From NCBI GenBank assembly GCA_047495785.1, contig JBLDXI010000015.1, forward strand, positions 2,418,001-2,482,000: a DNA stretch of 64,000 bases, in the 5' to 3' direction. The stretch's first letter is position 1; the number at the start of each line of letters is the position of its first letter. Positions 7,550 through 38,956 of the stretch are shown here, one piece after another. The stretch comes from Lepidodermella squamata (Eukaryota; Animalia; Gastrotricha). A program made the translations under genes and the position numbers. Under the pieces are notes generated by a model, which worked only from the letters and a program-made list of their open reading frames with translations, was not told the origin of the DNA and ran no database searches.

Positions 7550-8016
7550 CTAAACCGACCACCAAAACAGCATACCAGCAATATGAACCGGTCTCATACA
7601 AGCGCAAAACAAATTGTCCCATCGTTCGTCACGGCCCTGACAGACCCTCCAGGCTCTGCACCTAAATAGTAAAAGTATGCAATTTAAATGGAAAATATAT
7701 ATTTAATATGGAGGGATTTGATTGCTGGTTGTATACTGAAAGAGCACGGAAAATGAGATCAGAACGATGTAAAGCAATTAACAATGATTTTTCATCGTTC
7801 AGCTCTTTTTCGCTCATTTCTCTTCGCTGCTAACCTGCATTCGCAATTAGCCATCAGCTCTTGATGTGGCAGACACTGAGCATTTGGACACCAGAGTTCT
7901 CTGAAGTGGTCCGCACTCACAATTTGATAACGCACAGGGTCCGAAATAGCAATTTCAACGACGAGGCTCAAACAAACTAAGATTGTGAGAACTGCAACGC
8001 TTCTCATGTTAGCCAT
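7550..8016 (-). CDS. Secreted 8-Cys peptide P1 (exon1 8016-7835, exon2 7661-7550; 97 aa)
   Basis: Signal-like MANMRSVAVLTILVCLSLVVEIAIS, then HFRELWCPNAQCLPHQELMANCEC-R-CRAWRVCQGRDERWDNLFCACMRPVHIAGMLFWWSV*. GTTAGC donor and TTTAG acceptor give an in-frame join. Confidence 0.85.
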
Positions 8017-8082
8017 TATTACATTCCAAGCTTCCACACAATTTACTGAACGGGCTTAAAAAACCAGAAACAGTGTTTTTCC

Positions 8083-8195
8083 ACTGAACTTGAATTAATT
8101 AAACAAGTTTCAACATTTATAGGGCGGTTATTTTTGAATATTCAAAACGACGAGTTTGATGAATCAATGTGACACATCAGCCACAAAAAGCTATA
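8083..8195 (-). promoter_or_regulatory. Conserved peptide-family promoter (TGATG(C/T)GTCACATTGATTCATCAAAC block, TATA box, TCAGT initiator)
   Basis: TATAAA at 8121-8116 and TCAGT about 30 nt downstream. The same block recurs upstream of most array members. Confidence 0.65.
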
Positions 8196-8744
8196 GTCAT
8201 CATGTTTAGTTTCAGTGGACCGTAGTGTGGGGCTAATTGAAAAAAGCAACGTTGTTTTTGCAGCCTGCTGAACATGATTGAAACTACGGGACTTACTCGG
8301 TTATTTTAGTGAGCGCATATCTATACACATAGTGTAATTTTTGTTTCAAATAAAAGGCTTCAACATCAAAATAGCGCAGCATATTCATTGCTTTTGTTTT
8401 CGAAACTGGCTTTTCGTTCTTCTTAATTAAGTACAATCCTATTTTATTGCCCCGGCATCTATTTATCCATCATAATCATCTGCGTTGGTGTGCCGCGAAA
8501 ACGGATTGAATACTGTATCGCGAGGTCTTATTCCGGATGGGGTAAATTCGGACACTTTTACTATGAATACAATTACCAGGGACAAAAGCTGCAACTTCTG
8601 GACTTGACCCGAAGAAACTCGAGGTTTCGAATCAATTCCCGAGAGCTTCAAGTCAGACGTTCAGCGCATTTCGCACTTACATATCCCCTTATCTGAAGAT
8701 GAGTTGGGTTGGTTCCGAGCAACAGTTGAATAGTGAGTGTATAC

Positions 8745-10175
8745 CAGTGGTTCCCAAACTTTTTTATTTAAAACGGAAGGTCTATTCGTACATAGTACTC
8801 TAGAGGAAGCTACATAGTAAACATAGTAAACATAGTAATTTTGCATAATAACACTTTTAAGTCAGAGTTTTTTTTAAGGGGTGGACATGGTTGACAATGT
8901 CAACACCAAAGCGGGTCAATGTCAACACCAAAACAAGGCGCATCACCCGGGCCAGACAGCAAAATGAGAATTTATCCCACTGATTTGTTAATTTTTAGAG
9001 GTTTAGGAGCGTGTTTCAGTTGGAAATCTTCAAAGTTTTCTCGCTTCGCTCGCTTATTAGCGGAGTTTAGCAAATACAGGAATTACAATTTCCATTCTTG
9101 ACAGCTCCGGGATCCAAGATCGCACCCTGCGGCCGAGGGAGAGAATTGAACCGCCTTAGAATAACCCTTTTGATTTAAGCTCTTATTCCTGAAAAATGTC
9201 CACCGAATTGAAAAATAACAAGAACATTTCTGAGATTTATTATGTGTGAAATTTACTAATGGCTTTTATATTTTCTTACGTTTACTCACGGGTAACATCG
9301 TGCAAGTCGCTAGAGTGCCTCGCGGAGAGATTCGTCATCATGACGCGAAAAACATCCTATTTTAGACTACTTTCAGCCAAAATTACGTGAAAAACCGTTA
9401 GCTAAAGCTCGCTGCGCTCGCAAGTTTACATATGTCTAATCATTGCTCACTATCAACAGAATCGAAGTATTGAGAAATGACGATATCGCGAGCGAGCGTA
9501 GCGAGCGAGCGAACGATTTTTATATCCATGTCTTTATGTCAACACCAAAAAACATAAAGTCAACACCACTGGATTCCTTAAAAAACACACTGTTTAAGTT
9601 GGATTTTTTAAAAGACGCGAGCGAAGCGAGCAATGCATTTCAGCCACCGAAAACCTTGCCCCGCCGTGAAACGCGAGCGAAGCGAGCATCACGGGGCAAG
9701 GTTTGAGTCGAGCGTAGCGAGAAGGCAGTGCGCTATCGAACTTGAATTTTTTCGAGCGGAGCGAGAAAACCCATTGAAAATATGCGCTGCGACCGTCTAA
9801 CGCCCTATCGTCCGATTTTTTCGGTAGAGCAAAGCTAGCTTGATAATGTTTCGCCTCGCCATATTATGCGAGTTTTTCCTCGAATCTAGCCTTCCCTTGG
9901 GCCTTATAAATACATATTAAATATAAAAGATCATGCCCCTATGGAAGAGTCACCACGCTGTATAGGTAATCTGACTTCAGTTTTGAGCCGCTTTTTTGAA
10001 CACTTTGGGTGATGATCCAACGAAATTTACCTACAAAATAACTCTCACTTTGATGCGTCTACCTGTAAAATTTCATCTAACGTCAAATTTCGAATTTCCA
10101 CACCTTGCTAAAAAAACGCGCAAGACTATGTACGAATAGCAATTTTCGCGTAAATAGTTATGTACGAATAGCTTG
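8745..10175. mobile_element. Nested non-autonomous DNA element remnants replacing exon 1 of a peptide gene
   Basis: Absent from the paralogous position (~22000). Starts with hAT-like CAGTGGTTCCCAAACTT. Inverted repeat CTATTCGTACATAGT 8782-8796 vs 10125-10139. Possible inner TTAA-flanked element 8878-9577. Many GCGAGCGAAGCGAGC motifs. Confidence 0.55.
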
Positions 10176-10209: not shown

Positions 10210-10444
10210 ATGCAGGAGAACAGCCTGTTGGGGCGAGAAGTTATGGGACTACACTTCTTGCACTTGTCAGAGGCCATTGTACACGGCATGGGCTGCTTCT
10301 GGGATGGAATTGAGACGGCAGTCAGGCCGAAGTATGTCAACGATCATGGAGACTATCAACTCGAAATTTCTCGATATTCAACGAAATCACCGTGAAACCT
10401 ATTATCGCGAACTCACTGGAGAGCCGGTAGACCTTGTAGCGTAA
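10210..10444 (+). pseudogene. Orphan exon 2 of 8-Cys peptide gene (P2)
   Basis: TTTAG|A-CRRTACWGEKLWDYTSCTCQRPLYTAWAASGM... with no exon 1 upstream; TE sequence lies there instead. Confidence 0.75.
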
Positions 10445-11098: not shown

Positions 11099-11451
11099 TC
11101 ATGGCCCATACCAGGCTATAAGAAAGGGCCTCACACAAACGCAAATCTTCTCGTGCCATCGCTCCGCGCTACTACACGCTTTTCTCCTGCACCTAAATAA
11201 TAAATGAGTATAGTATGCAATTTTGAATAAATAAGATATCTCTATCATTGTGGTTGACTTACTACTAACTTGCATTCACAACTAAAAGTCTGCACTTGGT
11301 AGTACGGACACCTCGAATTTGGACACCATACATTTTTGAAATGGGTCGCACTCAAAATTGGGCGTGTATTCGCATGGTTCGAACTGCCGATTTCGACGAG
11401 ACTCAAATGAACAAAGACTATGAAAACTACACTAATTCTCATGCTAGCCAT
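11099..11451 (-). CDS. Secreted 8-Cys peptide P3 (exon1 11451-11270, exon2 11192-11099; 91 aa)
   Basis: HFKNVWCPNSRCPYYQVQTFSCEC-K-CRRKACSSAERWHEKICVCVRPFLIAWYGP*; 77-nt GT-AG intron. Confidence 0.85.
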
Positions 11452-11668
11452 TATTGTTTATCAAGCTTACAGCAAACGTTGAGCTGAATTTGAATAGCTT
11501 GTAAACAGCGGAAAACGATTTGAGGTGGGCAATTGCTGCTCAGCCTTGATCTCATCAAAATAAATGAATGGCATTATCGGAGCCAGCGGCTTCAGGCCAG
11601 AAAAAGCTTTCCAGCATAAACAAATAACTTTACCCGTGACGTTCTCTTCAAACAAGTAGGGATTTGAA

Positions 11669-12050
11669 ATGGCTGATAGAATATGTTATCAAATTCAGGG
11701 ATCAGGGCGGGGGCCATATGAAGTTGATACGGGATCATAGGATGAGCTACATAGTGGCAAAGGAGATGACACCACTGAGATTGTACTAGCAAGCGACGAG
11801 CATTACTCAAAGCTGTGGTGTAAAAATGCACGGTGCCTGTCCAATGAAGAGCTGGCCGATTGAATGCATGTGAATGCAAGTTAGCAAAAAAACCTCCTCA
11901 ATATAGAGACATCTTTTTAATTGAAATTTCCTATATCTATTCTTCAGGTGCAGGATAAAAACTTGTACTGTTGAGGCGACTGGCAATGGAACGACATTTC
12001 TTGTACCTGTCTCCTGTCTGAGGCCGTTCCGCTCGAAATGGCCGTTTAGT
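11669..12050 (+). pseudogene. 8-Cys peptide pseudogene P4
   Basis: HYSKLWCKNARCLSNEELA at 11801. In-frame TAG at ~11738, no signal peptide, 2-nt insertion before CEC, frameshifted exon 2 from 11948. Confidence 0.75.
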
Positions 12051-12347
12051 TGGTGGGGTTGGTGGGAATGAAGTCAGCTGCCATACCAAATTAAAAAAAA
12101 ACATACTTTGAGACTCCTATTATTACACCACGTCGTATGCTCTATTGTTTTCTCAACCCATAAATCCTTTATTGCTGATTATCTGGTGGGTTAGGCCATT
12201 CGTAATACCGTAAACTCCCAAATACAAGCCCAGGCGGCACTAAAAAGAACATCAACGTGCCGACAAAGAGGTGCAAAGAGGTGATTCCAAATTCACTTCT
12301 TATTTTTGCAGGCCAGTTTATTAGCTGTTGTGGAAGGTGGAAAAACA

Positions 12348-12450
12348 ATGACCGATGACAGAACTGTTTTATTTCCCGCACTCTTTGTTCCTCTGATTCT
12401 AATCGTCGAAATGCCGAACTCTAAGCAGGCCAATTTTGAAACGGCTAGCA
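12348..12450 (+). pseudogene. 5' fragment (signal region only) of 8-Cys peptide gene P5
   Basis: MTDDRTVLFPALFVPLILIVEMPN matches MADNRAVLIRALFVSLVLFVEIAM (22304) and MADNSTVLIRALFV (27252), including the 5' flank. No Cys core follows. Confidence 0.65.
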
Positions 12451-13055
12451 TTTCTAGCAGATCATACAGGGTGTTGCATATATGTTTACGAGGGATCCAC
12501 AGAAGCCATAGCTCATTCGATAGATAATTGATTCACAATTCATTTGTTACCAAAAAAACATAAAAATGCGATTCATCCAGCTTAAAGTGTTTGCATTGTA
12601 GTGAAAACCACCTGAAAAATTAGATTCCCTTTTTCCACGACATGATGAAATTTTAAAAGCCTTCAGAGAGTGAAAGGATGGTTTGCGATGGCCCTATAGA
12701 CTTATCGCTGCCAGAAAGTCAGGACAAACATTTTTAACGCCATGTGTTGCTCAAATGGAACATCTTGTTCTCATTTTACTTAATATTTGGAAAAAGATTA
12801 GTCACGATTCCCGCTATATTGTCCGTTTTTTCCATATTTTAGTCCGTTGTTGTTGTTGCCGCGGCCCGACGGAAATCAAGCGCCGCACAGAAAATCGCCG
12901 TTGATAGCACTCAACTATTGCTTTCAAGGTCTCTAATTACGCAGTAGGCGACGGTTATTTTAGCAAATAGGAAGCGTATGGTGTCTGGTGTCTAGTCAGG
13001 TCTCGAATACCTACAGCTAGGTATCCCAGCAGTCAATTCCTGAAAACTCTGAAAT

Positions 13056-15533: not shown

Positions 15534-15726
15534 TTTCCTGTCGAAAAGTGCTGGAAACATCGACCCCCCCCCCAATATATTAATAGCATACTTGAAATAA
15601 CTTCTCATATTCAAATGCCTGGAAGAGTTGTTGAATTAAACTGAAAAGGGGTGTTATTCGAAACATTTATTCCGAGTTATCCTTGCACGAATGGGTAGAA
15701 TCAGCACTCAATACTATTCTTTAAAC

Positions 15727-16131
15727 GGGTATACTCGACTTGCACAAAACGTTTTGCACAAAAAGTTTTGCACAAACAAAGTTGCACAAACTTTTTTGCA
15801 CAAAATCGATTTTTTTCATTCGTTCGAATCGTCGATGAATTCTAAGCATCGCTGATACTTTGATTCAAGTGACAGTGAATCGGAATAAAATTGCCTCCCG
15901 CATTGGTGAGAAAACGAGCCTTTAAACCGTCAAAGACAAGCAAATTTAACATAATATGCCGTGGAAATAAATGAGCACGCGCTCCTTCTTGTGTACAACC
16001 ATCCAAAACAAATGTATCAGCGATGCTTAGAATTCATCGACGATTCGAACGAATGAAAAAAATCGATTTTGTGCAAAAAAGTTTGTGCAACTTTGTTTGT
16101 GCAAAACTTTTTGTGCAAGTCGCGTATTCCC
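15727..16131. mobile_element. MITE with ~120-130-bp TIRs and 9-bp TSD (Mutator/foldback-like)
   Basis: Near-perfect TIRs with TTGCACAAA subrepeats. TSD TCTTTAAAC at 15718-15726 and 16132-16140. Empty site in the paralog at 2548-2556. Confidence 0.9.
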
Positions 16132-16317
16132 TCTTTAAACATTATAAAGAAAGTCAGACATTTTTTAATCGCAGTCCAGTATTAAACCGACAAGTCAAGC
16201 TTAGGAATTCGGCAATGGAAACACATGCATGTTAGATGTTAGATGTCTTTTCCAGTCAAATTTTGATTTTCGGAAGGCACAAAGTTGCGGTGATTATGTA
16301 CAACTTATATACGATAT

Positions 16318-17715
16318 TTATCGCTTGTAGCTGCGACGCTCTTTTCTATACCCCTTCATTTTAACAATAACATTCCCCCGTCCACGGTCGCCGAACGGTG
16401 TCCAGAAATCGACCCCAGTCGCTGCAGTAAATTGAGCAATTGTCGTCTCGTTAAAGCATCCATCGCTGTTATACCAATCAAGGAATCTGTCCATCATTCC
16501 ATACTCGACAGGTTTATACAATTGCCGATGGCCACCGCATTGTTCAGCCGGTAAGGCTGTGGCCACCTGCCGAGTTTCAGGGGCAGTTGGTTGAGCTGTT
16601 ACCACTTGACGGTTTTGCGGGGCAGGTGATAAGGCTGTTCCCACCGGCCGTGTTTCAGGAGCACTCGGTGGAGAAGACGGTGCCGGTGAATGATTACGCG
16701 CTGGTACTGGTGTTGGTACCCTTGAGACGGCGCATTGGAGAAGGCGTCTCAGGGCCACGAGAATAGACTCGTCTTCGCCGATATTTTCCACGGCTTTAGC
16801 GACCAGCGAGTCGAGGATAGCCTGTGTTGTAGGGCCGATTTCCAGCTTGATCTCCGATTTCTTCGCAATGGCCTCGTAGAGCTCTGCGTCCGTAGTAATT
16901 AAATCTGCCACCTTTTTGTTAACTCGAAGAGATATCGTAAAATCCGATTTGAGCTGTAAGCTTTCAGCGATGATTGCCTTCAGATGGTCAACTTTAAATG
17001 CCCCATCAGTTGATTGGTACACTATGGTCTTCTTCAAAGAACCACATCGGACGATGAATTTTACCATTTTCAGAAGCCTAAAAAACATAGGAATATCAAT
17101 ATTAAAGCTGAAATAGCAATAATTAATTGCTTTTTAAATTATCAAATTGGAGGAAAAGGACAATTAAAATAGATTTGTTTGCCTCGTTTTTGTCTCTAGG
17201 GGCTATCAATCGCGTTGATGTCTCCTATTTGAAGCTGGTATTTACGCCTTAGTATGATTAGCATTTGGAGAATTTTCAATATACTGACTTCTTAACACTT
17301 ACGAGAAGCAAGAAGCAGTTAGTACTACAGCTTCATTAGCTCCTTCTGCATTAAAGCCCGAGTTCACGATGCTGAACGGCGTAGAGCCCATTTTATGTAT
17401 TAAGGAACCTTGCTCTACCCCAGCGAAGCAGAGTTCGGAAATAGGAAAATATTTCCGAAAAAAATCATACTGAAATGTTGCTCGGGTTATTTTTGGACTT
17501 ATTAGGATTAATATATCAGGAATGTTACTTATTCCTATTGTTTATATTTTGGTGGCACGCCCCTATTTAACAAAACTGAAGGAATAAAATTTGGGCAGCA
17601 TAAAATTATAAAAAGAAGGCAGAGTCCAAATTACTTACGAGTTCTTGCTTTTGCTGTTCAGCTTGGTTTGAAGGCGAGCTTTGACAGGGCACCAGCAGTC
17701 AAACAATGCTTGCAT
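16318..17715 (-). CDS. PB1/ubiquitin-like + Pro-rich linker + Myb-like protein (exon1 17715-17639, exon2 17077-16318; 278 aa)
   Basis: Exon 1 MQALFDCWCPVKARLQTKLNSKSKNS splices in frame to LLKMVKFIVRCG. ITTDAELYEAI resembles the end of PB1 domains. C-terminal domain DFWTPFGDRGRGNVIVKMKGY. Confidence 0.78.
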
Positions 17716-20675: not shown

Positions 20676-21068
20676 CTAAACCACCCACCAAAACAGCATA
20701 CCAGCAATATGAATCGGTCTCATACAAGCGCCAAACAAATTGTCCCATCGTTCCTCACGGCCTTGACAGACCCTCCAGGCTCTTAATAGTAAATATGCAT
20801 TCAAGTGGACAAGATATATTTAATATGGAGGGATTTTATTGTTGGTTGTATACTATAAAGGAGCACGCAAAATGAGATCTGAACGATGTAAACCAATTAC
20901 CAATAATGTTTCATCGTTCAGCTCTTTTTCGTTCATTCCTCTTCTCTGCTAACCTGCATTCGCAATGAGCCATCAGCTCTTGCTGTGGCAGACACTGAGC
21001 ATTTGGACACCAGAGTTCTTTGAAGTGGTTCACACTCACAATTTGAACCACAGGGTCGGAAATAGCAA
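20676..21068 (-). pseudogene. 8-Cys peptide pseudogene P6 (duplicate of P1)
   Basis: Near-identical core to P1. A ~100-bp deletion removes ATG and signal peptide, and a small deletion at ~20784 removes the exon-2 acceptor and first Cys codon. Confidence 0.8.
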
Positions 21069-22303
21069 ATAGCAGTAGCTTGAAATACCAGATACAGTAT
21101 TTACCCACTAAACTTTTGAATTAATTAAACATGTTTCAAGATTTATAGGCCAGGTTTTAAATATTCAAAACGACGGGTTTGATGAATCAATGTGACGCAT
21201 CAGCTACAAACAGCTATCGTCATCATTTGAAATTTCAATCGGCCGTATAGCGGTGCTAATTAAAAGTTTTTTTGCAGCCTGCTGAACATTAAAGGAAATT
21301 ACGGACTGTCGGGTTATTTTAGTGAGTGCATATCTATACGCCTTTTTCGGAAATTTAGCCAGCCCTATCTTATGTACTAAGCTCGAACTGTACTTCAATC
21401 AGGATAAAAATCCGTAAATGGATAAGGATAAGAGGCCAGGGAAATCCTGATTCTTCCTCGGCTTCATTTCTGCCCTCGTTTCCATCTTCCTTGTTCTACT
21501 TGAGCAATATCATTGGCTGGTTCCATGTTTTTCGAGTATAATTTCCTTAAATTCATCGGTTGGTAATGTAATGAAACCAAATCCAACATTGTTGGCTTCT
21601 GTAATATTTCGTCGATTTTTTAGCCGAAATCCACGGAAATCCCGCTTTCTTTCCGAAACTCGAAACTGTCATTTCAGTCACTTTTCTTATTAAAGCAGGA
21701 TTCAAAATTTATCGCGAAAACGTGCGCCGCGAAAACGGATAGCATTTTCGCGATCACGTATCACGCGAATCTGCATCACGGTCTTATTCCGGAAGGGAGT
21801 AAATTCGGACACCTTCGAATACCATTACCAGACAAAACCTGCAACTTCTGGACTTGACAGAATCAAGAAACCGAAGTTCCGAGCGTTTCACGCCAGACTT
21901 CGACAGCGCATTTAACTCTTACACCTCCCCTTTTGGAGACTTTCATTCTGAAGTTAAGGTGGTTCCGAGCAACAGTTTAACACTGAACGAATAGTGAGTA
22001 CTACCGGGTTTTTTAGTTGCTATATCTCGGAGGAGACTGGCAGGTAATTCGAGATTCATAACTTGAGCATTGTGTGATGACCACCCGAATTCAGTGCGTG
22101 TAAGGTATAATGAGCATTGGGCATTGAGCTGTTCGACAGTCATAATACGTCACAATAATTCACGCATGCCGTCTTCTTGAATATTTAACACCTGTCAGTT
22201 TGGAAATACGATAGCTTTTTGAATTAATTCCAATTTCACTTGTTCTACTGTTTTCTAATTTTCGCAGGCCATTTTATTAGCTGTCGTGGAAGTTCGAAAA
22301 CCA

Positions 22304-23018
22304 ATGGCCGATAACAGAGCTGTTTTAATTCGCGCACTCTTTGTTTCTTTGGTTTTATTCGTCGAAATTGCAATGACTTTTCCGACCATGTGGGAAATGG
22401 ATCCACTAAATGTTCTCGGAAATGTTCTCAAACACTCCGCGGGGTGGTAAATTCCTTTTTATTTTTGAGACGTCCCATTCGTTGAATGGATGGGCCGAAG
22501 CCATGGGTCCCGAATGAGCGCTCTTAGGGTCGCTTGTGGGGTCTCTTGAGGACAGCTCGGTAGCGATTAGTGCAGTCTCGCTGACACTCCTAATCTACCA
22601 CTTTTATTTTTGTAACACGATGGAGTGGTCGGCCACCGTCGGGGTAGAGCGTCATTGATAAACCACGGTCGACCCGGTTGGGGATCGAACTCGTGCCCAT
22701 CGATCTTGACGCGCAATACACAGCAGACAGCTATCCACTGAACTACTGTGTGCCCCAGCGGGGTGGAGTGCCACCCATTTCGAACGACTTTGGTGCCCAA
22801 ATGCACGGTGCCTGCAGTTTGCTGAAGAGCTGACCGCTAATTGTGAATGCAAGTTAGCAATAAAGCTACAACCACAATGTAGTGACAAATTTTGATTCAA
22901 AATTTGATATTATTTATTATGTAGGTGCAGGAGAAAAGCTTGTAGGAGCGAGGAGCGATGGGACGACACATTTTGCGCTTGTCTGAGGCCGTTACATATT
23001 TTATGGGCTGGGAGATGA
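22304..23018 (+). pseudogene. 8-Cys peptide gene P7 interrupted by a SINE (exon1 22304-22852, exon2 22925-23018)
   Basis: Removing the insert plus one TSD restores ...HSAGWSATHFERLWCPNARCLQFAEELTANCEC-K-CRRKACRSEERWDDTFCACLRPLHILWAGR*. Confidence 0.85.
22448..22757 (-). mobile_element. tRNA-derived SINE (~310 bp)
   Basis: Minus strand has A-box TAGTTCAGTGG, B-box GAGTTCGATCC and an A-rich 3' end. 9-bp TSD GCGGGGTGG at 22439-22447 and 22758-22766. Confidence 0.85.
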
Positions 23019-24072: not shown

Positions 24073-24429
24073 TCATTTTCCCATCGTCCAGCTACCACCT
24101 ATCCAGCCACCTAAATGGAACGGCCTCAGACAAAAGCAAAAAGTTTCGTCCCAATGCAGCTCGTCCCTGCAGGTTCGTCTTCTGCACCTAAGCCACAAAT
24201 ACATGCGGTTATCAATCGAAAATATTTACCCGGACGTTTTATATTGCTATAACCTGCATTCACAATTGTCAGTCAGCTCTTGGTAGTCTGGACAAAACGA
24301 ATTCGGACACCATAGATTTTTGAAATGGCTCGCACTCGCAATTTCATAGATATTCCCAGGGTTCGAAATGGCAATATCGACGACGAGACTTAAACTAACA
24401 AAGACTGTGAAAACTACACTAGTTCTCAT
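24073..24429 (-). CDS. Secreted 8-Cys peptide P8 (exon1 24429-24254, exon2 24187-24073; 96 aa)
   Basis: HFKNLWCPNSFCPDYQELTDNCEC-R-CRRRTCRDELHWDETFCFCLRPFHLGGWIGGSWTMGK*; 66-nt intron. Confidence 0.85.
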
Positions 24430-24499
24430 GCTAGCTATTATCCAGCTTAAAACGAAAGTTCAACTGAATACAGCTTGCAAAAAACGAAAGCTTTGTTTC

Positions 24500-25270: not shown

Positions 25271-25870
25271 TTAGCTCGGTCGGTCCGTTGTGCCCTGCCT
25301 TCTTGCCATGGCCTGCTTCGACCAGCTTCTTTCGACCAGCCAGCTAACACTTAAAAGATGCGGCCTCAGACAAGCGCAATATTTTTCGTGCCATTTCGAC
25401 CCGCCCGAACAGGTTTCTCTCATGCAGCTAATAAGGGCAAACAATAACATGCGATTATCATAAAAGTCTCAAAAAAGTACTTTTAACCCGCCTAAAAATA
25501 ATTGGGGACGTGGAAAGAACTTTGTCACGTTGTTTCTAAGGGTCAAATAGACTGTTCCTTTTATTTTTTAGTTCTTCCCTCGTCCCCATGCATTGTAGGC
25601 GGATTATAAGGGACTTTTTTAAGATCTATAAGAAATATGCAAGCGGCCGTTTTATTCTAACCTGCATTCACAATCAGCAGTCAACACTTGGTAGGGCGGA
25701 CAATTCGCATTTGGACACCACAGTTCTCGGAAATGATCGATACCCGAATCTGGTTTGACATCCTCACCGCTGTTCGTGGCTGGCGCCCTTCGGTACGGTA
25801 GGGCAATTTCGACGAGGAGACTCAGACAAACACACATTGTAAAAACTAAACGAGTTCTCATGTTAGCCAT
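25271..25870 (-). CDS. Secreted 8-Cys peptide P9 (exon1 25870-25662, exon2 25427-25271; 121 aa)
   Basis: HFRELWCPNANCPPYQVLTADCEC-S-CMRETCSGGSKWHEKYCACLRPHLLSVSWLVERSWSKQAMARRQGTTDRPS*. Confidence 0.85.
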
Positions 25871-27251: not shown

Positions 27252-27741
27252 ATGGCTGATAACAGCACTGTTTTAATTCGCGCACTCTTCGTCACGTTGA
27301 TTCTAGTCGTCAAGATTGCTTGGCCGAACCCTACGCTAACCAATTTTAAAACGCCTGACATAGCATTGGATCAATTTTCCAACGCGTCAGCATTTGAACC
27401 ATATGATGATAGAGAATTAATGGATCGCCTATATTATCAATATCTCTTAGAAAACAACCTCGTAGACAGCGAGGACGAGAGTGCGGATCATTTCTCAGAA
27501 CTGTGGTGTCAAAATGCGCGATGCCGACCCTACGAACAGCTGAACGATGATTGTGAATGCACGTAAGCAATAAAATCTCCGCAATATGGAGACGTATTTT
27601 CAATTAAATATTTCAAATTTAATGCTTAGATGCATCAGGACAATGTCTTGTACAGGCGAGTGGCGATGGGACGAAAATGTTTGCGGTTGTGTGAGGCCGT
27701 TGCTGTGGAAATTGTCGTTTGATTGGTTGGGTGTGTGGTGA
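27252..27741 (+). CDS. Secreted 8-Cys peptide P10 with long acidic spacer (exon1 27252-27562, exon2 27630-27741; 140 aa)
   Basis: HFSELWCQNARCRPYEQLNDDCEC-T-CIRTMSCTGEWRWDENVCGCVRPLLWKLSFDWLGVW*; GTAAGC donor, 67-nt intron. Confidence 0.87.
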
Positions 27742-28337: not shown

Positions 28338-28780
28338 TTAGTACGTTTGATCTGTTTTGGCCTGCCTTCTTTCCACGGCCTGCATTCTTTCGACCAGCCA
28401 GCCAAGACCTAAGTGAATCGGCCTCAGACAAGCGCAATGCTTTTCGTGCCATTATGTCAGCCCACCGTATGTCAGCCCACCCGAACACGTTTCTCTCTTG
28501 CATCTAAATCATAGATACAAAAGCAGGCAATTATCAAAAAGAAATATGAACCCTTTACTGCTAACCTGCATTCACAATTGTCAGTCAGCACTTGGTAGGG
28601 CGGACAATACTTATTAGTACACCAAACTTCTCTGAATTGTCGTTCGCCCCCATGCCCGTAATCATAACCGCCGTAACGGTCCCCGCCGTGCGAGTACAAT
28701 CCACGGCAATAGGCAATTTCGATGAAGAGAGTCAAACAAACGAAAATTGTGAGAACCGAGCAAGTTCTCATGTTGTTCAT
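28338..28780 (-). pseudogene. 8-Cys peptide P11 with premature stop (exon1 28780-28566, exon2 28503-28338)
   Basis: Gly/Tyr-rich spacer. A ~15-nt tandem duplication (GGTGGGCTGACATA x2) in exon 2 gives TAA at 28454-28452, before WHEKHCAC. Confidence 0.75.
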
Positions 28781-30158: not shown

Positions 30159-30774
30159 CTAGTACATTTGAACCGTTTTGCCCCGCCTTCTTTCGACGGC
30201 CTGCCTTCTTTCGACCAACCAGCCAAGACCTAAGTGAATCGGCCTCATACAAGCGCAAAACTTTTCGTGCCATTTCAGCTCGCCCGGACACGGTTCTCTC
30301 ATGCAGCTAAAGGGCAAACAATAGCATGCAATTATTATCATTAAAACGAAAAAACGAAAAACGACAAATAAAATCCAATTTTCGCTCTTTTCCCAGATGT
30401 TTTTCAAAACAATTTGGCCTGGAAATAAGCTTAAGATAGGCTTATTTTCCGCATGGATCTTTATTCCTATATAAAATGTAAACTATTACTGCTGGGTTAG
30501 TGTTAGTGGCCTGCCCTTCTAATCTTGAAAGTAATTTCGAAATAAAATTATTATTTTTGAACATGTGCTTTAATGCTAACCTGCATTCACAATCATCAGT
30601 CAGCACTTGGTAAGGTGGGCAATACGCATTTGGACACCAGAGATGTTTGTAATGGTCGGGCCCCTTATCCGGTCTAACTCCATAACCGCCGTAGCTGTAC
30701 GGTAGGGCAATTTCGATGACGAGACTCGAGCAAACAAAGATTGTAATAACTAAACGAGTTAGCATGTTAGCCAT
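30159..30774 (-). CDS. Secreted 8-Cys peptide P12 (exon1 30774-30581, exon2 30306-30159; 113 aa)
   Basis: HYKHLWCPNAYCPPYQVLTDDCEC-S-CMREPCPGELKWHEKFCACMRPIHLGLGWLVERRQAVERRRGKTVQMY*. Confidence 0.85.
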
Positions 30775-31317
30775 TGTGTTGTATATATGCAAAGCTTCGA
30801 TAATACAATTTAACGGCTTGCGAAAATCACATGCAATGCTTCAACTATGACCTTGAATTAATTGAAAAACATTTCTAGGCTGCGGGTACGGAATATTCAA
30901 AAATGACGGGTTTAATGAATTGATATCAATACATGTAAACTATCCGCATCAACTTTGGTTTCAGGGTATATAGCGTACCTATGTATAGCGGTGAAAAAAA
31001 CGATGTTTTGCAGCTGGAACCTGCAAAAAGCACGGGGATTTTAGGATTGTCAGTGATATTATACATGCAAATCAGGTATAATTATCGTCAATGAAAGAGC
31101 AATGAAAGAAGAAGAATGAAAGAAGAATGAAAGAGGCAATGAAAGAGCTAAAAACTTGGCGCCAGAATCTTTGTAAAATTGTAATTGATCTAAAAATTGA
31201 GCTTATATGAAATTTGCCGCTTCCTGCTATATCCTATTTTATTGTGCCATTCAGCCTGAGAAAAGATATTTCTCAGGTCGATTACTTCCACGACATGATT
31301 TCGCCGAATTTTAGCTA

Positions 31318-34300
31318 CCGTGGTGTGGGGTAACTTGGCCGGAAATATGGTTTTTTAAACCTCATATGTCTCCGGTAACTTGTTTCGCTTTAAATTGTAT
31401 ACCGAAAAAACCCCCGTTCAATTCTCGATCGATTGGTCAAAACCCGGTCGGCGACCGATAAAATCAATCGATTCTGTGGAGGTTGAAGTGATCTTGACCA
31501 CGTGGGGTAACTTGGCCGCATGGCTATTTGACTTGGGGATGAACCATCTGGCAGAAACTATGGTGATGATTCATCACGCCCTCTCATGTCTAGGGGCGTG
31601 TTCAAAAAGTCTCAGCGCCACTGAATGCGCATTCTTAATTACAGGCATTGTTCTCTCATTGCGCAATAGTGTTTAAACGAAACTTCAACTTTTATTTCTT
31701 TTTATCGCAGTCTAACGCGGAAAGCTTATTCACCTCGGGAAATTTTTTAAATATTGCAATAAATTGTGGGAAAATTGTTAGGAATTTGCGCCCAACAGTC
31801 TCTCTTCAATTTTGATTTTTTGGGAACATTTTTGTAATAATTTCCCTCCAAAAGGCAAATAAAAGCGACCTAACGGATTGTCGAGTGATTTTCACCCCGT
31901 TTTTTCGGTTTACGACGATAGAGAACAATCTAGAATCTAGACCGCCACAGTGTCGCCGCGATTTTATCGGCATAAATTATACATGCTGCGAGAAAGTTTG
32001 GAATCGGTCTCGCTCTGAATGAATTTTTGGGAATTGTTCATCAAACGACTCTTGATTTTAAATTGAAAGCTGCAGCTATCACCCTCCCGATAAAAGTAAA
32101 GGTATTTTTCAAAATGTTTTGGGAAGGCTTCGAAAATTAGCAGTTGTGAAATTGAAAATATGTGATGCCGCCCAAAATTTTTAATTTAATTTTTTAATTT
32201 AATTTTCAATTTTTGGAAAAGAAAAATTAAAAATTGAACTGAGCCTTATGTGTTTTCCTGAAATAGGGGAAAAGGAAGAAGTGGTACCATTCGGCATTTC
32301 ATTTGCTATTTTTTTGCATTGATTAATTAAAGAAATTCATTTATTCAAACTTGATAATTTATAAATTTTTAATAGCTGTGAAGTAGAAATGTGCCGTAGA
32401 GGCGTTCCAAGGTGTTCCGCAAGGTTTCCGAATAACTTTCCCACTTTGCAGACGTAGAAACACTTTGCCGTCAAAAAATTGATAAAAATAAAATTCATAT
32501 GGAAACATTGTCTAATCATGACGCACGTGAGTAATCAGGGAAAGTTTCAGACTGCTCGAGCAGCCTGAAACTTCGAACAATGCTTGTCCCTCACTGAACG
32601 TTCTGAGCATTAGCCGCTTTTACACTACAAGCACATATGTATTTCTGACTGTTCATAGTAATTAAGTCCACACAGCAGTATTACAAGCGATGAAAATGCC
32701 AAATTAAATTTTAATTTTTGGAAATCCGAGTTTCAATTTTAAGTTTATTGTAATTTTTGAGGTAATTATTGAGGTGCTGAAGGAATATAGCGTAAGTATT
32801 GACGGTAATAAATGTTAAGAACATTTCTTGCCACCTCAGCTACATCTCCCTTTTTACCGCATTCGAAAATCGTTTTTTAAATGACAAGGAAGGGTCAGTA
32901 CCAACTCGTTCATTTTAGGCGCTGAGATTTTTAGCATTTATAACAAGGAATTCTGGGATCGGATGAAAACGCTGTTTTCACAGAAAGATTCCTCGCGGAG
33001 ATACCTTTCAAGTGGCACCTTGAACTCAGAAAACTGAAGTCGCAATCGCGAGCGGTAATTACCTGAATTTTGTGGGTTAACATGGCCGATTTTCAACGTG
33101 CGAAATGCGCACTAAAATTTGGCATATACATGAGAGGGCGTGATGAATCATCGTCCTAGTTTCTGCCAGATGGTTCATCCCCAAGTGAAATAGCCATGCG
33201 GCCAAGTTACCCCACTTGGTCAAGATCACTTCAACCTCCACAGACCGGGCTTTGACCAATCGATTGAGAATGGAACGGGGATTTTTTTGGTATACAATTT
33301 AAAGCGAAACAAGTTACCGGAGACATATGAGGTTTAAAAAACCATATTTCCGGCCAAGTTACCCCACACCACGGTAGAATCAGCATTTGAAATGAATTTC
33401 TAGCATTAATTGGCAGCTAAGCCAAATAAAAGATCCATTTCATGCTCGAGAAAAAGTATTTTGATTGACATATATTTTTCTAATTTGATTACAATTTTGG
33501 CTTCGACGAATGCTCAGTTGAATTTATTATTTTTGGGTCTGAGTTTCCAAGCTGAACAAATTAAGGTGGATACCCGCGGAGCAAATCGATTATTTCCGGC
33601 CGAACAAGCCCTTTATTAACCTTCTATTTATTGTTTTAAAATTTAAGAGCCGCAGCAATATTCTAGTGCCTACCTCACAGCCTAATTTGAAAAATTTCTT
33701 TACTATTTTTCTCATTTTGGATGCATCAAGATGTATGCCCTGTTTATGGAAAATTTGATTACAGGCCTCAAAAACAGTAATTTTTGTCAATTTTTGGTAT
33801 CAACGGTAGGTATTTTCATTTCTCTTTCAAAATAACTGCAATTATTGGCAAGTTATTTCCCGAGGGATGGAGAAGAAATCAAAAGGCGTAGTGACCAATT
33901 TTCCCGAATTTTTTTAATCATTCTAAATAATTATAAAAAATATTTGATACCTTCAAACCCGTAAATCCTTGAAAGTTAAAAAGCGAGAAAACTCGAGTTT
34001 GAGTATTGCGCAATCAATTCTTTGTCTTAATTAATGACGCACATATTAATTACACTTCATACTTACGCTCTCGTGTAAAAGCGGCTATTAAAAAATCGCC
34101 TGAGGTGCGTTTTTTATTAAAACCGTGGTGCTATTGTTCAGCGCTGTGATCAATGTTTCGGTGAGATTCGCAACAGAGAAATCACAATCGGCACGTCTAT
34201 CATGAACTGAACGGCTCGAATTGCTGTCTAGGCCGGTCAGAAAAGACAATTCCCGCGCGGATTAAGAACATTTGGCCGCCTCTGTTGCGAATCTCACCGA

Positions 34301-34668
34301 AACATTGATCACAGCGCTGAACAATAGCACCACGGTTTTAATAAAAAACGCACCTCTGAAAGCGTAATCAAGAGCATCTGTGTCCCTTTCCTCTGAAACT
34401 AAACAATGCGAAAAATCGCTCTGAACATTAAAAAACGCAATTATCGAGTAATTCTGAATAAACAGCGTTCTGAAGCTCTGAGACTTTTTGAACACACCCT
34501 AGGCCAAATTTTAGTGCGCATTTCGCACGTTGAAAATCGGCCAAAAGTTACCCCAAAAAATTCAGGTAATTACCGCTCGTGATTGTGACATCAGTTTTCT
34601 GAGTTCAAGGTCTCATTTGAATCGGCCAGAAGGCGAGACTTTTACGGCCAAGTTACCCCACGCCACGG
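31318..34668. mobile_element. Composite/nested TA-flanked DNA transposon (Tc1/mariner-pogo-like ends)
   Basis: TA|CCGTGGTGTGGGGTAACTTGGCC at 31318. Inverted ends followed by TA at 33374 and 34668. ~250-bp inverted copy of the left end at ~33126-33374. Flanks rejoin to match the uninterrupted paralog near 39700-39740. No intact transposase. Confidence 0.75.
34102..34356. repeat. 77-bp perfect inverted repeat (34102-34178 / 34280-34356)
   Basis: Direct reverse-complement match with a ~100-bp spacer, inside the composite element. Confidence 0.85.
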
Positions 34669-35409
34669 TAAGATGAAAGAAGCTAAGATGAATTGCGGCA
34701 TCATTAATCTTAACGCTGCGCAATATTAGAGTGATGAATATTTTCCTGATTTTTGTCAATTTTCAGTATTCGCGAACAAGTTGGTTCAAGTTTGAGGAAG
34801 TTTTGGCTAACATTTCTCGAAAAATTGCATTCCTGATGCACTAATATCTGGATTTCCGCTTGCATCGCTCCCAAAAACTGTCGTTCGGGTCATTCTTTAT
34901 AGCCCTATTATATTGCCACGGGACTTGAACAACAAGGCCGCATGCTTTGTACTTGTAGCTGGAGTTGTAAATTTATTGATTGATTTGATGAGCATTTTCC
35001 GCCGGCTCGTTCGCTAAAATGGTCCGGCGGTTCTTTTGACTCGGGACCTCAAGGTCTGAGCACACGAATAGGGTCTTTTAAAGGTCTTAAAAATGCATAG
35101 AGGATTCTCTACAGAAAAGCCTGCCTCAGCTGCTTGATTGAAATTTAAGATTGAGATTGAAACACAGGGTATTAAGTCGAGTATAGCAAGACTCCTGAAT
35201 GCCTTGCCTGGCGTCCCATTTCGATTATCGGGCAATGAAGTCTGCTATATAGCTCTAAACTTTCATTTCAAGATGAGCTTCAGAAGTGGGTGACCCGAAA
35301 ATTCGGGGTGAATAAAAAAACACACCCTTTCACGTTCAACATGCAGGAAAAACCTGGTTTTTTAATTTAGCTCCACACTGCGGTTCACCTGATACTAAAT
35401 ATGATGATG

Positions 35410-35470
35410 ATAGCTGTTTGCGGCTGATGCGTCACGTTGATTCGTCAAACCCGTCGTTTTGAATATTCAA
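35410..35470 (+). promoter_or_regulatory. Peptide-family upstream block for P13
   Basis: AGCTGTTTGCGGCTGATGCGTCACGTTGATTCGTCAAACCCGTCGTTTTGAATATT on the + strand, matching the orientation of the + gene at 35724. Confidence 0.65.
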
Positions 35471-35723
35471 ACCCGGCGCTATACATGTTGAAACATCTTT
35501 ATAAGCTTTGTTTTTCCGGAATAATCGGACGATAGGGCTTTCAACACACACATTTAGCATCGAGTATAGTTACCTATATTCTATGAATATATCCGATGAA
35601 AACAAACGCGTTGTTTTGAATAATTAAAACCTGGCCCTTTAGAGAAAGTTTAACCTTTTGAATTTATTCAAGTTCACTCCTGGATTCTAATTTTTTGAAT
35701 TTTTTGTGGAAGGTCGATGAACG

Positions 35724-36133
35724 ATGACCGATTGCAGAGCTGTTGTATTGATTTCATTGACTCTATTCGTTGGAATCGCAATGCCGAATCCTACGCGGAC
35801 CAATGTTAAATTAGATGATGACCCTGAACTCGTCATACCCGTCGAATACGAACGGCCTACTATGAGTAGTCGTCACTACACGGAGTTTTGGTGTCCAAAT
35901 GCACGGTGCCTGGATTTCGAAGAGCTGGCCCTTAATACGTGTAAATGCAAGTTAGCAATGAAACAAGCAATGAAACAAGAAAAAATTGTGTATTCCATAT
36001 GTTTAGGTGCAGGAGAAAAGTTTGTCGAGGCCCGGAGGTATGGGACGATTCTTCTTGCGCTTGTTGGGGGCCTCTTGCGTTAATGGCTAGGTGGATCGAA
36101 TTAGATCGGCAGTCACGCCGAAATATTTCCTGA
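35724..36133 (+). CDS. Secreted 8-Cys peptide P13 (exon1 35724-35950, exon2 36007-36133; 117 aa)
   Basis: HYTEFWCPNARCLDFEELALNTCKC-K-CRRKVCRGPEVWDDSSCACWGPLALMARWIELDRQSRRNIS*; 56-nt intron. Confidence 0.85.
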
Positions 36134-37782
36134 ATCTCCGAACTAATGAACTCGAATTATCGGCGCAATTATAGTGAAACCTATGATGAGAGCCGGTAGC
36201 GTAACCCTGATTATAGTCAATGCATACTAACTTGGACTAGAGGCCCACATCTATGCGTATTATGATAGCCCTGGCTTTTCTCTAGGGCTAAGATAGCGCT
36301 TAACATACTAGCGTTGCTTTACAAGCGGATTTCATCTGGGCTACTAACCATGTACATGAGCTATTCCTTTGTCAGGGTTTTGAGGAAATTCATGAAAGAT
36401 CTTTGTTTTTGCTGCAATAGTAAAATCCGTATACTTCACAGTATTAATTCAAAGTCTGAATTATTTTTGATGGGTTCTGAACTCCTTATATATATTTTAT
36501 TGTTATAAAAAAACAAAAGCCCGTTGTTATTAATAAATAACAGTTGCCATAACGACACTTGGAGTAACTAGAATTTTCTTTGGATATATGTTTTAAGGTT
36601 TAGGATTATTTTCATTTAACAGGTTCGTAGAGGAGAGAATTGAGCATCTTGCTACTGCGATAGACTATTTCCGATAGCTACCTGGCGCCCTAGTTTGATG
36701 AACAGTTATCAATGTTAGGTTCCAAGTCGGCTGATATCGGAAAAATCACTGATTCGTAAAATCGATATTTGGTAATCTAATAGTGCTTGTAGTCAAATTA
36801 ATGCTGTAACCCTAAATGCTCACCAATTTTTAATTTCCGATAAATTCCGAATATTATAGATAACTTATCGGAGTAATAAAGACTGTAAGATGTGAATTTC
36901 GTAATTTATATGTCTCAGTTATATGAATTTGCGCCACCTCGACCGCATTCTATTTTGACCCCATTGCAGAGGAGTGAAATGATGAAAAAAAGATGATTGC
37001 CAGCATTGGCGAAAACGTTCGAAGGCCGCAGCATCAAGTTTGGAGGCATGAAAGGTGCGGATGACCACTGGATGACCAATATTGACGAAATATGTTCATT
37101 TGGATTCTGGATTCTGGAATCTGTTCATTCTGGATCTTTCTATGAGTTGGTCAGTTCCGCCGTTTTCAAACGTTTTGATCTGGAGTGAAGGAAAAACCTG
37201 TTACCATGCGTTAGCTGTATAGCCAACAAGCTGAAAATCATTGTCATCGACCGCGGCATCCCTCCTCTGTTCCTTTTTACCAACCACAAAACAACCACAA
37301 ATTCAATTTTTTACGTCTTGTTTTCTCCAGATGGTGAAACCTGATTGAAATTTCAACATTTAAAAATTTGCGGGAATTCTGATACCACAAAGCAATTAGT
37401 TGTCGAAAGATATAATAGCCATAGTTATTATCCAAAACTTGAACACAATTTAACGGAATGGCTTGCGCATTCAGTGTTTCAACTATAAACTCGAAGAACA
37501 TCGTTTGGCGGAACCAAATACGATTTTTGCGGAACGTAACTCGAAATATGTCATCAGTCATTTTTGAATATTTCTAAGAATTTTATGCTGAGCATGAATT
37601 CTGAATTGAACACTGCGTCTTGCAGAGAATCTTGCAATTCACTGGTGAATTTTGTAGAATTATTGTGGCCAATCGTGACCTTCAGGCCACTGGAAAAGTC
37701 TAAAATTTGGTTCCGCTAACAGCAGATTTGGTTCCGCTCACCGTAAATTTGGTTCCAGGTACCAGGTACTGAATATTTAAAC

Positions 37783-38133
37783 GGAGTGGATATTCGTACT
37801 TTAATAAGTACGCGTTTTTTGATATTCATACTTAAATAAGTACGCATTCTCAAATTTGCATGCAAAAACATGAAATTCGGGTTGGAAAGCTCAGGAAACC
37901 GGAAAGGTCCTGAACCTTAGATCCAACTTGATGAAAATAGGGAGAAACTCCAGATTTTGCCATCAAATTTGACAAGTCCAAGTTATCTCAGCTTCCTGGG
38001 TGGGATAGGATTCTTACTCAGCTTTAAAAGCTGAATATTATGGTCGAAAAATTTCGAATATTACGTAAGCGGAAAGCCACTTATGTACGAATATCAAATA
38101 ACGCGTACTTATTTAAGCAGGAATATAACGACC
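37783..38133. mobile_element. MITE with ~50-bp imperfect TIRs, inserted in an orphan peptide-family promoter
   Basis: TATTCGTACTTTAATAAGTACGCGTTTTTTGATATTC is inverted at ~38082-38126. Flanks rejoin to GAATATTTAAAAACGAC.GGTTT.ATGAA.CAATGT. Confidence 0.6.
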
Positions 38134-38336
38134 CATTTTTAAAAACGACTGGTTTTATGAAGCAATGTAGATCAATTTAAAATACCCTCATCAATTCTGG
38201 TTTCAGCGTAAATGGTGTATGTACAGCGGTGCGAATTTGCAAAAGCCTCGTCATTTATTTCAAGAACTGCGCATTTTTCACTAGTTTCATACAACTCTGT
38301 ATATTTGATAGCTTTTGAGAGATGTCTTGAAATTCG

Positions 38337-38956
38337 TTAATACGGTCTATCCGTATTTCCCTGCCTGCTTGCCATGGCCTGCTTCGACCAGCTTCTTTCG
38401 ACCAGCCAGCCAATACCTAAATGATGCGGCCTTAGACAAGCGCAATACTTTTCGTGCCATTTCAACGCGCCCGAACACGTTTCTCTCATGCAGCTAAAGC
38501 GTAAATAATAATAATAATATACAATCATCATAAAAGTCTCGAAAAACTCTCACAAAAGGTCCCTTAATCCGCCTGAATAGAAAGGGGACGTGGGTCGAGT
38601 CTGTCGAGTTGTTTCTAAGGGACTGTCCCGTTCTTTTTCTCAAATTGTGCCTCAGAAACAACGCGACACAGTTCTACCCACGTCCCCTTTCTTTTTAGGC
38701 GGGTTAGCGGCTTTTAAAAGATCAATAAGAATTATGCACGGGGACTTTTCATTGTTAACCTGCATTCACAATCAGCAGTCAGCACTTGGTAGGGCGGGCA
38801 ATGCGCATTTGGACACCACAGTTCTCGGAAATGATCGATACCCGAATCCGGTTTGACATCATCACCGCTGTTCGTGGGCGCCCTACGGTACGGCTGGACA
38901 ATTTCGACTACCAGACTCAGACAGAGAGAAAGTGTAAAAACTAAATGAGTTCTCAT
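38337..38956 (-). CDS. Secreted 8-Cys peptide P14 (exon1 38956-38760, exon2 38493-38337; 117 aa), close paralog of P9
   Basis: HFRELWCPNAHCPPYQVLTADCEC-S-CMRETCSGALKWHEKYCACLRPHHLGIGWLVERSWSKQAMASRQGNTDRPY*. Confidence 0.85.

What the first reader, a model, noticed from the sequence alone, without database searches (positions are those of the whole stretch)
7550..38956. Array of at least 14 two-exon genes for an unrecognised secreted 8-cysteine peptide family
Seen: splicing at one conserved phase-2 intron turns scattered short ORFs into 8 intact 91-140-aa precursors plus 6 broken copies on both strands. All follow signal peptide, variable spacer, H(F/Y)xxLW-C-x4-C-x9/10-C-x-C-x-C-x4/5-C-x10/11-C-x-C-x-RP, Trp-rich tail. 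The ORF track misses the full products. Inference: an invariant disulfide scaffold, divergent loops and rapid gene birth and death are typical of toxins, antimicrobial peptides, pheromones or adhesive/structural secretions. I do not recognise it as a named family.
Basis: partly seen in the sequence, partly recalled or inferred. Interest (0 to 1): 0.9.

Follow-up and report, generated by a model that had tools for sequence, protein, structure and literature searches.

The report
Orphan secreted 8-cysteine peptide gene array
A 31-kb stretch of an unidentified compact eukaryotic genome carries eight intact and six decayed copies of a two-exon gene for a small secreted protein with eight fixed cysteines; it has no detectable relative in any public protein, structure or domain collection searched, so it is a real new family of a common general kind.

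Summary
Between 7550 and 38956 there are eight intact two-exon genes (91-140 codons) and six degenerate copies, on both strands. Each intact gene has a signal-peptide-like N-terminus, a variable spacer, a 4-Cys core ending exon 1, a phase-2 GT..AG intron of 56-274 nt, a second 4-Cys core and a short Trp-bearing tail. Several results show these are real genes. Motif counts are 11 and 9 against 0.01-0.02 in shuffles. Intron lengths fall in all three classes modulo 3, yet splicing always restores the frame. Exons are better conserved than intron and flanks. dN/dS is about 0.35-0.7 in the Cys cores and about 1 in the spacer. A promoter-like block occurs only upstream of family members. Exon-by-exon searches found no relative in Pfam, PDB sequences, PDB folds, a 1.84-billion-protein exhaustive profile search, the 5.8-billion-cluster word search, or metagenome and prokaryote contigs. 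Function is inferred only: a co-regulated set of secreted disulfide-stabilised mini-proteins acting outside the cell. It cannot yet be decided whether they act in defence or in signalling. Three GABA-B-like class-C receptor genes lie in the same window, which is a lead and not evidence. The source organism could not be identified. The spliced (joined) product was not built or searched.

The parts
7550..8016 (-). g1, intact gene, 97 codons; exon 1 CDS 8016-7835, intron 173 nt, exon 2 CDS 7661-7550 (with stop)
   Evidence: promoter-like block 8055-8195
10211..10441 (+). A, degenerate copy: only an exon-2-like open stretch with its four Cys codons; no exon 1, signal part or promoter block recognisable
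   Evidence: (27 bits)
11099..11451 (-). g2, intact gene, 91 codons; exon 1 CDS 11451-11270, intron 77 nt, exon 2 CDS 11192-11099
   Evidence: promoter-like block 11497-11633
11747..12062 (+). B, degenerate copy: partial exon-1 core and exon-2-like pieces lying in more than one frame; no ATG, signal part or promoter block
   Evidence: (30.7 bits for exon 1; weak exon-2 hits in two overlapping stretches)
12348..12491 (+). C, fragment: ATG plus signal-peptide-like part only; no Cys core
   Evidence: (13 bits, E 0.014)
20679..21114 (-). D, degenerate duplicate of g1 (94-95% DNA identity over the exons): no ATG or hydrophobic start in the open stretch, two Cys codons replaced, acceptor AG not at the homologous place; promoter block kept
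   Evidence: promoter-like block 21082-21217
22304..23018 (+). g3, degenerate copy: ATG plus signal-like stretch, exon-1 core and exon 2 with all eight Cys codons and the shared GT..AG intron. The signal stretch and the core lie in different frames with stops between, and are about 235 nt further apart than in g6
   Evidence: promoter-like block 22143-22269
24073..24429 (-). g4, intact gene, 96 codons; exon 1 CDS 24429-24254, intron 66 nt, exon 2 CDS 24187-24073
   Evidence: promoter-like block 24473-24615
25271..25870 (-). g5, intact gene, 121 codons; exon 1 CDS 25870-25662, intron 234 nt, exon 2 CDS 25427-25271
   Evidence: promoter-like block 25889-26002
27252..27741 (+). g6, intact gene, 140 codons (56-residue acidic spacer); exon 1 CDS 27252-27562, intron 67 nt, exon 2 CDS 27630-27741
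   Evidence: promoter-like block 27100-27229
28341..28780 (-). E, degenerate copy: exon 1 whole, with ATG, signal part and four Cys; coding sequence interrupted by one in-frame stop; promoter block kept
   Evidence: promoter-like block 28805-28948
30159..30774 (-). g7, intact gene, 113 codons; exon 1 CDS 30774-30581, intron 274 nt, exon 2 CDS 30306-30159
   Evidence: promoter-like block 30816-30944
35724..36133 (+). g9, intact but most divergent gene, 117 codons (GP in place of RP); exon 1 CDS 35724-35950, intron 56 nt, exon 2 CDS 36007-36133
   Evidence: promoter-like block 35564-35698 and an extra partial block 35410-35498
38337..38956 (-). g8, intact gene, 117 codons; exon 1 CDS 38956-38760, intron 266 nt, exon 2 CDS 38493-38337
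   Evidence: promoter-like block 38998-39106

Best explanation
This is a lineage-restricted multigene family of small secreted proteins with four disulfides. SHOWN from sequence: eight intact two-exon genes and six decaying copies. They share one phase-2 intron and one promoter-like module, and they arose by tandem, inverted and segmental duplication. The two Cys cores are under purifying selection and the spacer evolves neutrally. INFERRED: the N-terminal hydrophobic segment directs the precursor into the secretory pathway. The eight cysteines form four disulfides around a small aromatic/Pro core (the HF/LW/PN, W and RP positions) that includes a beta-hairpin in the second half. The variable loops and the Trp-bearing tail carry target specificity. 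The copies are expressed together from the shared promoter as a cocktail of related binders acting outside the cell. My commitment on role: an extracellular binding protein, not an enzyme or a pore-former. I put it at about 40% a defence or interaction effector aimed at other organisms, about 30% a signalling or recognition ligand for the organism's own receptors, and about 15% a structural or matrix component, with the rest unknown.
For: Motif copies number 11 and 9, against 0.01-0.02 by chance. GT..AG is conserved at the same codon phase in all copies that have both exons. Intron lengths modulo 3 are 2,2,0,0,1,1,2,2, and no unspliced reading gives the second Cys core in frame. Exons are 89-91% identical against 72% for the intron and 52% for the 3' flank in g5/g8, and the same ranking holds in the g5/g7 and g7/g8 pairs; more distant pairs are less uniform. 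Pairwise dN/dS is 0.26-1.05. By region it is 0.34-0.36 in core 1, 0.46-0.71 in core 2 and 1.0-1.13 in the spacer. The N-termini have a basic residue followed by a 12-residue hydrophobic core with Kyte-Doolittle mean 2.6-3.1. Cys and Trp positions are invariant. The promoter-like block with a TATA-like element is found only at family members. Self-similarity shows duplication, including a roughly 13-kb segmental copy. There is no relative in any collection searched.
Against: No transcript, peptide or secretion data exist here, and no signal-peptide predictor was available. Structure models of the separate halves reach only moderate confidence (mean pLDDT 65-67, Cys cores 72-85) and say nothing about disulfide pairing across the halves. 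The role is not determined by any result. Net core charge is near neutral and there are no consistent dibasic sites, which fits none of the textbook classes neatly. The source organism is unknown, so no ecological context can be used.
Confidence: 0.7

Rival explanations
1. Host-defence or toxin peptides: membrane-active or target-blocking mini-proteins deployed against microbes, prey or competitors, diversified by gene duplication.
For: The genes have a signal-like start, a fixed disulfide scaffold, a tandem array with pseudogenes, and faster evolution than their neighbours (family dN/dS median about 0.55, against 0.16-0.24 for adjacent genes). They also have a hydrophobic Trp-bearing tail. 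Analogous orphan Cys-rich secreted families are known (aphid BCR, PMC3574423; coral SCRiPs, PMC10892658).
Against: The cores are near neutral (first half -2/-3, second half 0 to +4). dN/dS is below 1 in both cores with no sign of pervasive diversifying selection. Many non-Cys positions are conserved. No relative was found among solved toxin or defensin structures.
Confidence: 0.3
2. Signalling or recognition ligands for the organism's own receptors, possibly the GABA-B-like class-C receptors encoded in the same window.
For: Three class-C receptor genes with a ligand-binding ANF domain lie in the same 64 kb. One of them was copied together with peptide genes in the 13-kb segmental duplication. 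Purifying selection on the cores and many conserved surface-type residues suit a conserved receptor interface. The family has its own private promoter module.
Against: Linkage alone is weak evidence. The duplication copied everything in its span. The third receptor gene has no peptide gene beside it within the window. Receptor and peptide genes do not share the promoter block. There are no prohormone-type processing sites.
Confidence: 0.2
3. Structural or matrix components (wall, cyst, egg envelope, adhesive) cross-linked through cysteines and made in bulk from many co-regulated copies.
For: There are many co-regulated copies with TATA-like promoters, and the products are cysteine-rich and secreted-looking.
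Against: The products are small single units without repeats or low-complexity stretches. An even number of invariant cysteines suggests internal rather than intermolecular bonds (inference).
Confidence: 0.1
4. Not functional genes: chance ORFs, or relics of a dead family or of a mobile element.
For: Six of the fourteen copies are degenerate. No homologue is known anywhere.
Against: dN/dS is below 1 in the cores while the spacer is neutral. Exons are better conserved than introns and flanks. Splice sites and promoter block are conserved. Eight copies are open despite synonymous divergence of 0.3 to more than 1. There are no transposon-type ORFs or terminal repeats around the units.
Confidence: 0.04

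Closest known systems
Aphid bacteriocyte-specific cysteine-rich (BCR) peptides (PMC3574423)
   Same: Both are lineage-restricted orphans encoding small proteins (67-108 aa in BCR) with a signal peptide and six or eight cysteines at fixed spacing. Both have diverged loops, clustered genes and no Pfam domain.
   Different: There is no sequence relationship: the exhaustive profile search found no relative. The cysteine spacing differs, and the source organism here is unknown.
Cnidarian small cysteine-rich proteins, SCRiPs (PMC10892658, PMC2652719)
   Same: Both are taxonomically restricted secreted peptides with eight cysteines in multigene families, and both were first seen as orphans.
   Different: SCRiPs have three adjacent cysteines at the C-terminus, propeptide convertase sites, a 40-48-aa mature peptide and a beta-defensin-like fold. 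This family has no CCC, no consistent dibasic sites and a larger product, and the SCRiP structures were not returned by PDB sequence or fold searches.
Plant reproductive cysteine-rich peptides (SCR/SP11, LURE, PCP-B; PMC3525529, PMC5215366)
   Same: Both are small secreted 6-8-Cys peptides in species-specific tandem clusters. SCR/SP11 is genetically linked to its receptor gene (established knowledge), which parallels the peptide-receptor linkage seen here.
   Different: Those are defensin-like, with Pfam models that do not match either exon. Their receptor is a kinase, not a class-C GPCR. Gene structure and spacing differ.
Small disulfide-stapled beta-hairpin modules (EGF-like domains; TNF-receptor cysteine-rich domain as in BCMA)
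   Same: The exon-2 half-model has a confident beta-hairpin carrying the C-x-C strand, and its top fold matches, none significant, are of this type.
   Different: All fold matches have E of 2.9 or more and probability of 0.47 or less. Pfam EGF and TNFR models do not match. Each half has four cysteines, not six. This is a resemblance in style only.

Membership tests
Any Pfam-A family | Profile match at or near the curated threshold | tested here: not met
   Each exon of every copy was scanned on its own at E up to 10. No family recurs, and the single chance hits have E of 0.049 or more. The joined precursor was not scanned.
SCRiP (cnidarian small cysteine-rich proteins) | Eight-Cys framework ending in three adjacent cysteines; beta-defensin-like fold (PMC10892658) | tested here: not met
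   The framework read from alignments A1 and A2 has no CCC. The solved SCRiP-type structures were not returned by sequence or fold searches.
Defensin-like / cysteine-stabilised alpha-beta peptides (incl. SCR/SP11, LURE, PCP-B) | Helix pinned to a beta-sheet by paired disulfides; matches to the defensin-type profiles | tested here: inconclusive
   There are no profile matches and no fold match. However, only half-models of moderate confidence could be made, so the fold of the whole product is untested.
EGF-like / TNFR cysteine-rich domain | Six-Cys module with characteristic disulfide topology; profile match | tested here: not met
   There are four Cys per half. No Pfam match was found. Foldseek matches have E of 2.9 or more.
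CXCXC-repeat proteins (Pfam PF03128 type) | Repeated C-x-C-x-C units | not tested
   The single C-x-C-x-C here exists only across the splice junction. The joined product was left out under the scan's rule, so this could not be scanned. One unit would not make a repeat in any case.
Classical neuropeptide/prohormone precursors | Mature peptides flanked by dibasic cleavage sites, often with amidation signals | tested here: not met
   Dibasic pairs are absent from the spacer in six of the eight genes and from the tail in five of the eight, and none flanks the Cys core consistently.

The most novel reading that the evidence does not exclude
The peptides and the neighbouring GABA-B-like class-C receptors form a co-duplicating ligand-receptor cassette. 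This would be a self/non-self, mating or kin-recognition locus in which small disulfide-rich proteins are read by Venus-flytrap receptors, in a lineage where no such system is known.
Probability: 0.08. Interest if true: 0.8.

Novelty: new variant of a known kind. Interest (0 to 1): 0.45.

Why it matters
Tandem arrays of orphan secreted cysteine-rich peptides are a recurrent way for lineages to invent defence, symbiosis-control, venom and cell-cell recognition molecules. This array is a clean example: a previously unseen cysteine framework, an intact exon-intron and promoter architecture, and copies at every stage from intact to decayed. ORF-based annotation misses it entirely. It has no relative among about 15 billion predicted proteins, so its fold may also be new. 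If the linkage to class-C receptors proved meaningful, it would point to a new ligand class for that receptor family. As things stand, it is a well-supported new gene family of unknown role in an unidentified organism.

Tried and rejected
(1) Internal duplication: the two halves share cysteine spacing, but profile-profile comparison shows no similarity, so the idea is not supported.
(2) P0001, the only hit of the exhaustive profile search (E 1.5e-5), is a tandem-repeat protein that shares one short word and has no cysteine pattern. I rejected it as chance.
(3) Identifying the organism failed. Five exact look-ups of window ORFs were not on record. There are no tRNA or Rfam hits. The word-indexed search with the receptor found nothing at 1e-10, although the PDB search shows GABA-B relatives at 1e-20, so that blank reflects the candidate cap and not true absence. 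The metagenome scan with the receptor found nothing.
(4) Scans with the exon-1 alignment of prokaryote genomes and metagenomes found nothing.
(5) Indel and stop counts from DNA alignment of degenerate copies to divergent paralogues are unreliable. I used them only for the close pair D/g1.
(6) Two literature searches for a described family with these features found only analogues.
(7) Left out under the scan's rule: the spliced (joined) precursor was never built, searched or folded. Exons were searched apart by reference, so whole-precursor Pfam, HMM and fold comparisons remain undone.
Full report
OBSERVATION. The window is eukaryote-like: GC is about 0.40, all three standard stop codons are in use, there are no tRNA or Rfam hits, and introns are short. 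A six-frame regular-expression scan found 11 matches to the first half-motif and 9 to the second, falling into adjacent pairs on both strands. Dinucleotide-preserving shuffles give 0.01 and 0.02. Per-exon HMMs built from the clear copies and run over every stop-free stretch of the window recovered 13 copies plus one signal-peptide-only fragment. All lie between 7550 and 38956 and none elsewhere.

GENE MODEL. In every copy with both halves, the last Cys codon of the first half is followed by two coding bases and a GT donor (GTTAGC in most). An AG acceptor lies one base before the first Cys codon of the second half. Introns are 56-274 nt long, and their lengths modulo 3 are 2,2,0,0,1,1,2,2. The second half therefore sits in a different frame relative to the first in different copies, and only splicing at these sites restores it each time. 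Unspliced reading stops within 1-46 codons and never yields the second core. Eight genes are intact under this model, at 91, 96, 97, 113, 117, 117, 121 and 140 codons. A 50-nt GT..AG intron in an unrelated neighbouring gene shows that short introns are normal in this genome.

EVIDENCE THAT THE GENES ARE REAL. In the close g5/g7/g8 pairs, exons are better conserved than the intron and flanks. For g5/g8 the figures are 89-91% against 72% and 52%, and for g5/g7 they are 80% against 53%. Pairwise dN/dS is 0.26-1.05 and is 0.29 for the closest pair. Pooled by region, dN/dS is 0.34-0.36 in the first Cys core, 0.46-0.71 in the second, 0.49-0.62 in the signal part, 0.64-0.74 in the tail and 1.0-1.13 in the spacer. 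The cores are therefore constrained and the spacer drifts. Upstream of the ATG the copies share a block of about 140 nt with a TATA-like element and a conserved block about 30 nt downstream of it. A profile of this block hits only family members: all eight intact genes, three degenerate copies, and one extra partial block before g9. It hits no other gene in the window.

THE PRODUCT. Each precursor starts with one or two basic residues and a 12-residue hydrophobic core with Kyte-Doolittle mean 2.6-3.1, which is signal-peptide-like; no dedicated predictor was available. A spacer of 11-56 residues follows and is often acidic. Next comes a 24-25-residue first core, which carries net charge -2 or -3 in seven of the eight genes. 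Then come one junction residue, a 22-24-residue second core (net 0 to +4) and a tail of 8-29 residues with 1-3 Trp. Invariant positions are the eight Cys, two Trp plus one in the tail, and an Asn and a Pro. Nearly invariant positions are His, Leu, Glu and Arg. There are no consistent dibasic sites. AlphaFold models of the two halves separately reach mean pLDDT 65 and 67. The signal part is modelled as a helix, the spacer is disordered, the Cys cores reach 72-85, and the second core contains a beta-hairpin that carries the C-x-C strand.

DEGENERATE COPIES (outer bounds are given in 'parts'; counts only). 
- A keeps only an exon-2-like open stretch. 
- B has core remnants in more than one frame and no start. 
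- C is a 5' fragment only. 
- D is a recent duplicate of g1 that lacks a start and signal part, has two Cys codons replaced and has lost the acceptor signal. 
- g3 keeps all eight Cys codons and the shared intron, but its signal stretch and core are in different frames. 
- E is whole except for one in-frame stop. 
D, g3 and E keep the promoter block, while A, B and C do not.

ORIGIN OF THE ARRAY. Self-comparison shows a segmental duplication of about 13 kb (1 to about 8740 against 13160 to about 21990, up to 89% identical). It carries a receptor gene, two unknown ORFs and peptide genes. There are also many smaller direct and inverted matches among peptide genes. The receptor pair gives dS 0.33, similar to the youngest peptide pair.

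SEARCH FOR RELATIVES, exon by exon and by reference. 
- Pfam: nothing for any copy at E up to 10.
- PDB sequences, single and profile: nothing.
- Foldseek against PDB: nothing significant; the best result is E 2.9, to TNFR-type and EGF-like modules.
- Word-indexed search of 5.8 billion clusters: no candidate for exon 1 and none at E up to 0.1 for an exon-2 alignment whose first row was lengthened by reference so that full-length precursors passed the length filter.
- Exhaustive profile search of 1.84 billion representatives with the exon-1 alignment: one hit, a repeat protein sharing a short word, which I judge to be chance.
- Prokaryote-genome and metagenome contigs: nothing.
The joined, spliced precursor was not built, searched or folded, in keeping with the scan's rule. 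This is the main gap, although true relatives would normally have shown at least partial matches to one exon.

CONTEXT. The window encodes three class-C GPCR-like proteins with an ANF-type ligand-binding domain and a 7tm_3 region. They are closest to solved GABA-B subtype-1 receptors at E 1e-20. The duplicated pair is under strong purifying selection, with dN/dS 0.16. Whether these receptors have anything to do with the peptides is unknown; they do not share the promoter block.

COMPARISON WITH KNOWN FAMILIES. The family behaves like other orphan secreted Cys-rich families, namely aphid BCR (PMC3574423), coral SCRiPs (PMC10892658) and plant reproductive CRPs (PMC3525529), but it is a member of none. 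SCRiPs end in three adjacent cysteines and have convertase sites, and neither feature is present here.

VERDICT. This is a new family, with a new cysteine framework, of a well-known general kind. Its role is undetermined and the source organism is unidentified. Nothing in the window looked human or viral, and no such sequence was fetched.

Noticed in passing
window 23-2374 (+), 13056-15533 (+), 61806-63139 (+): There are three GABA-B-like class-C GPCR genes (ANF_receptor plus 7tm_3; PDB GABA-B R1 at E 1e-20). The first is cut by the window start. The first two are single-exon duplicates with 89% aa identity, dS 0.33 and dN/dS 0.16. The third has a 50-nt GT..AG intron and may run beyond what was examined.
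   Followed up: partly
window 1-8740 versus 13160-21990: A segmental duplication of about 13 kb (72-89% DNA identity in blocks) carries a receptor gene, two unknown ORFs and peptide genes. g1 and the degenerate copy D are its peptide-gene pair.
   Followed up: partly
window 2726-3295 (-), 5901-6530 (-), 16318-17088 (-), 18688-19470 (-): Four ORFs of 189-260 aa with no Pfam match form two duplicated pairs (dN/dS 0.18-0.24). The two types are distant paralogues of each other (25% identity, E 3e-21), sharing conserved N- and C-terminal blocks around a Pro-rich middle. Function is unknown.
   Followed up: partly
window 43006-43500 (-), 46220-46630 (-), 49936-50505 (-), 51530-51958 (-), 52399-54300 (-), 58419-59459 (-): This is a run of coiled-coil-type ORFs on the minus strand, some with similar N-termini (43321-43506 matches 46433-46618 at 73%). 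They give only sub-threshold Pfam coiled-coil hits and may be another lineage-specific family.
   Followed up: no
window 34761-35022 and 39788-40047; 31315-31592 and 33125-33377; 34102-34356; 55362-55555: Short interspersed repeats: a 262-bp direct pair at 98% identity, a 278-bp inverted pair at 87% identity, and two roughly 200-260-bp palindromes. They may be small non-autonomous mobile elements.
   Followed up: no
window 35410-35498 (+): An extra partial copy of the family's promoter-like block lies just upstream of the full block of g9, with no coding remnant attached.
   Followed up: no
method note: The word-indexed protein search returned nothing at 1e-10 for the 825-aa receptor, although the PDB search finds GABA-B receptors at 1e-20. 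Its blank for this query reflects the candidate cap and is not evidence that relatives are absent.
   Followed up: yes
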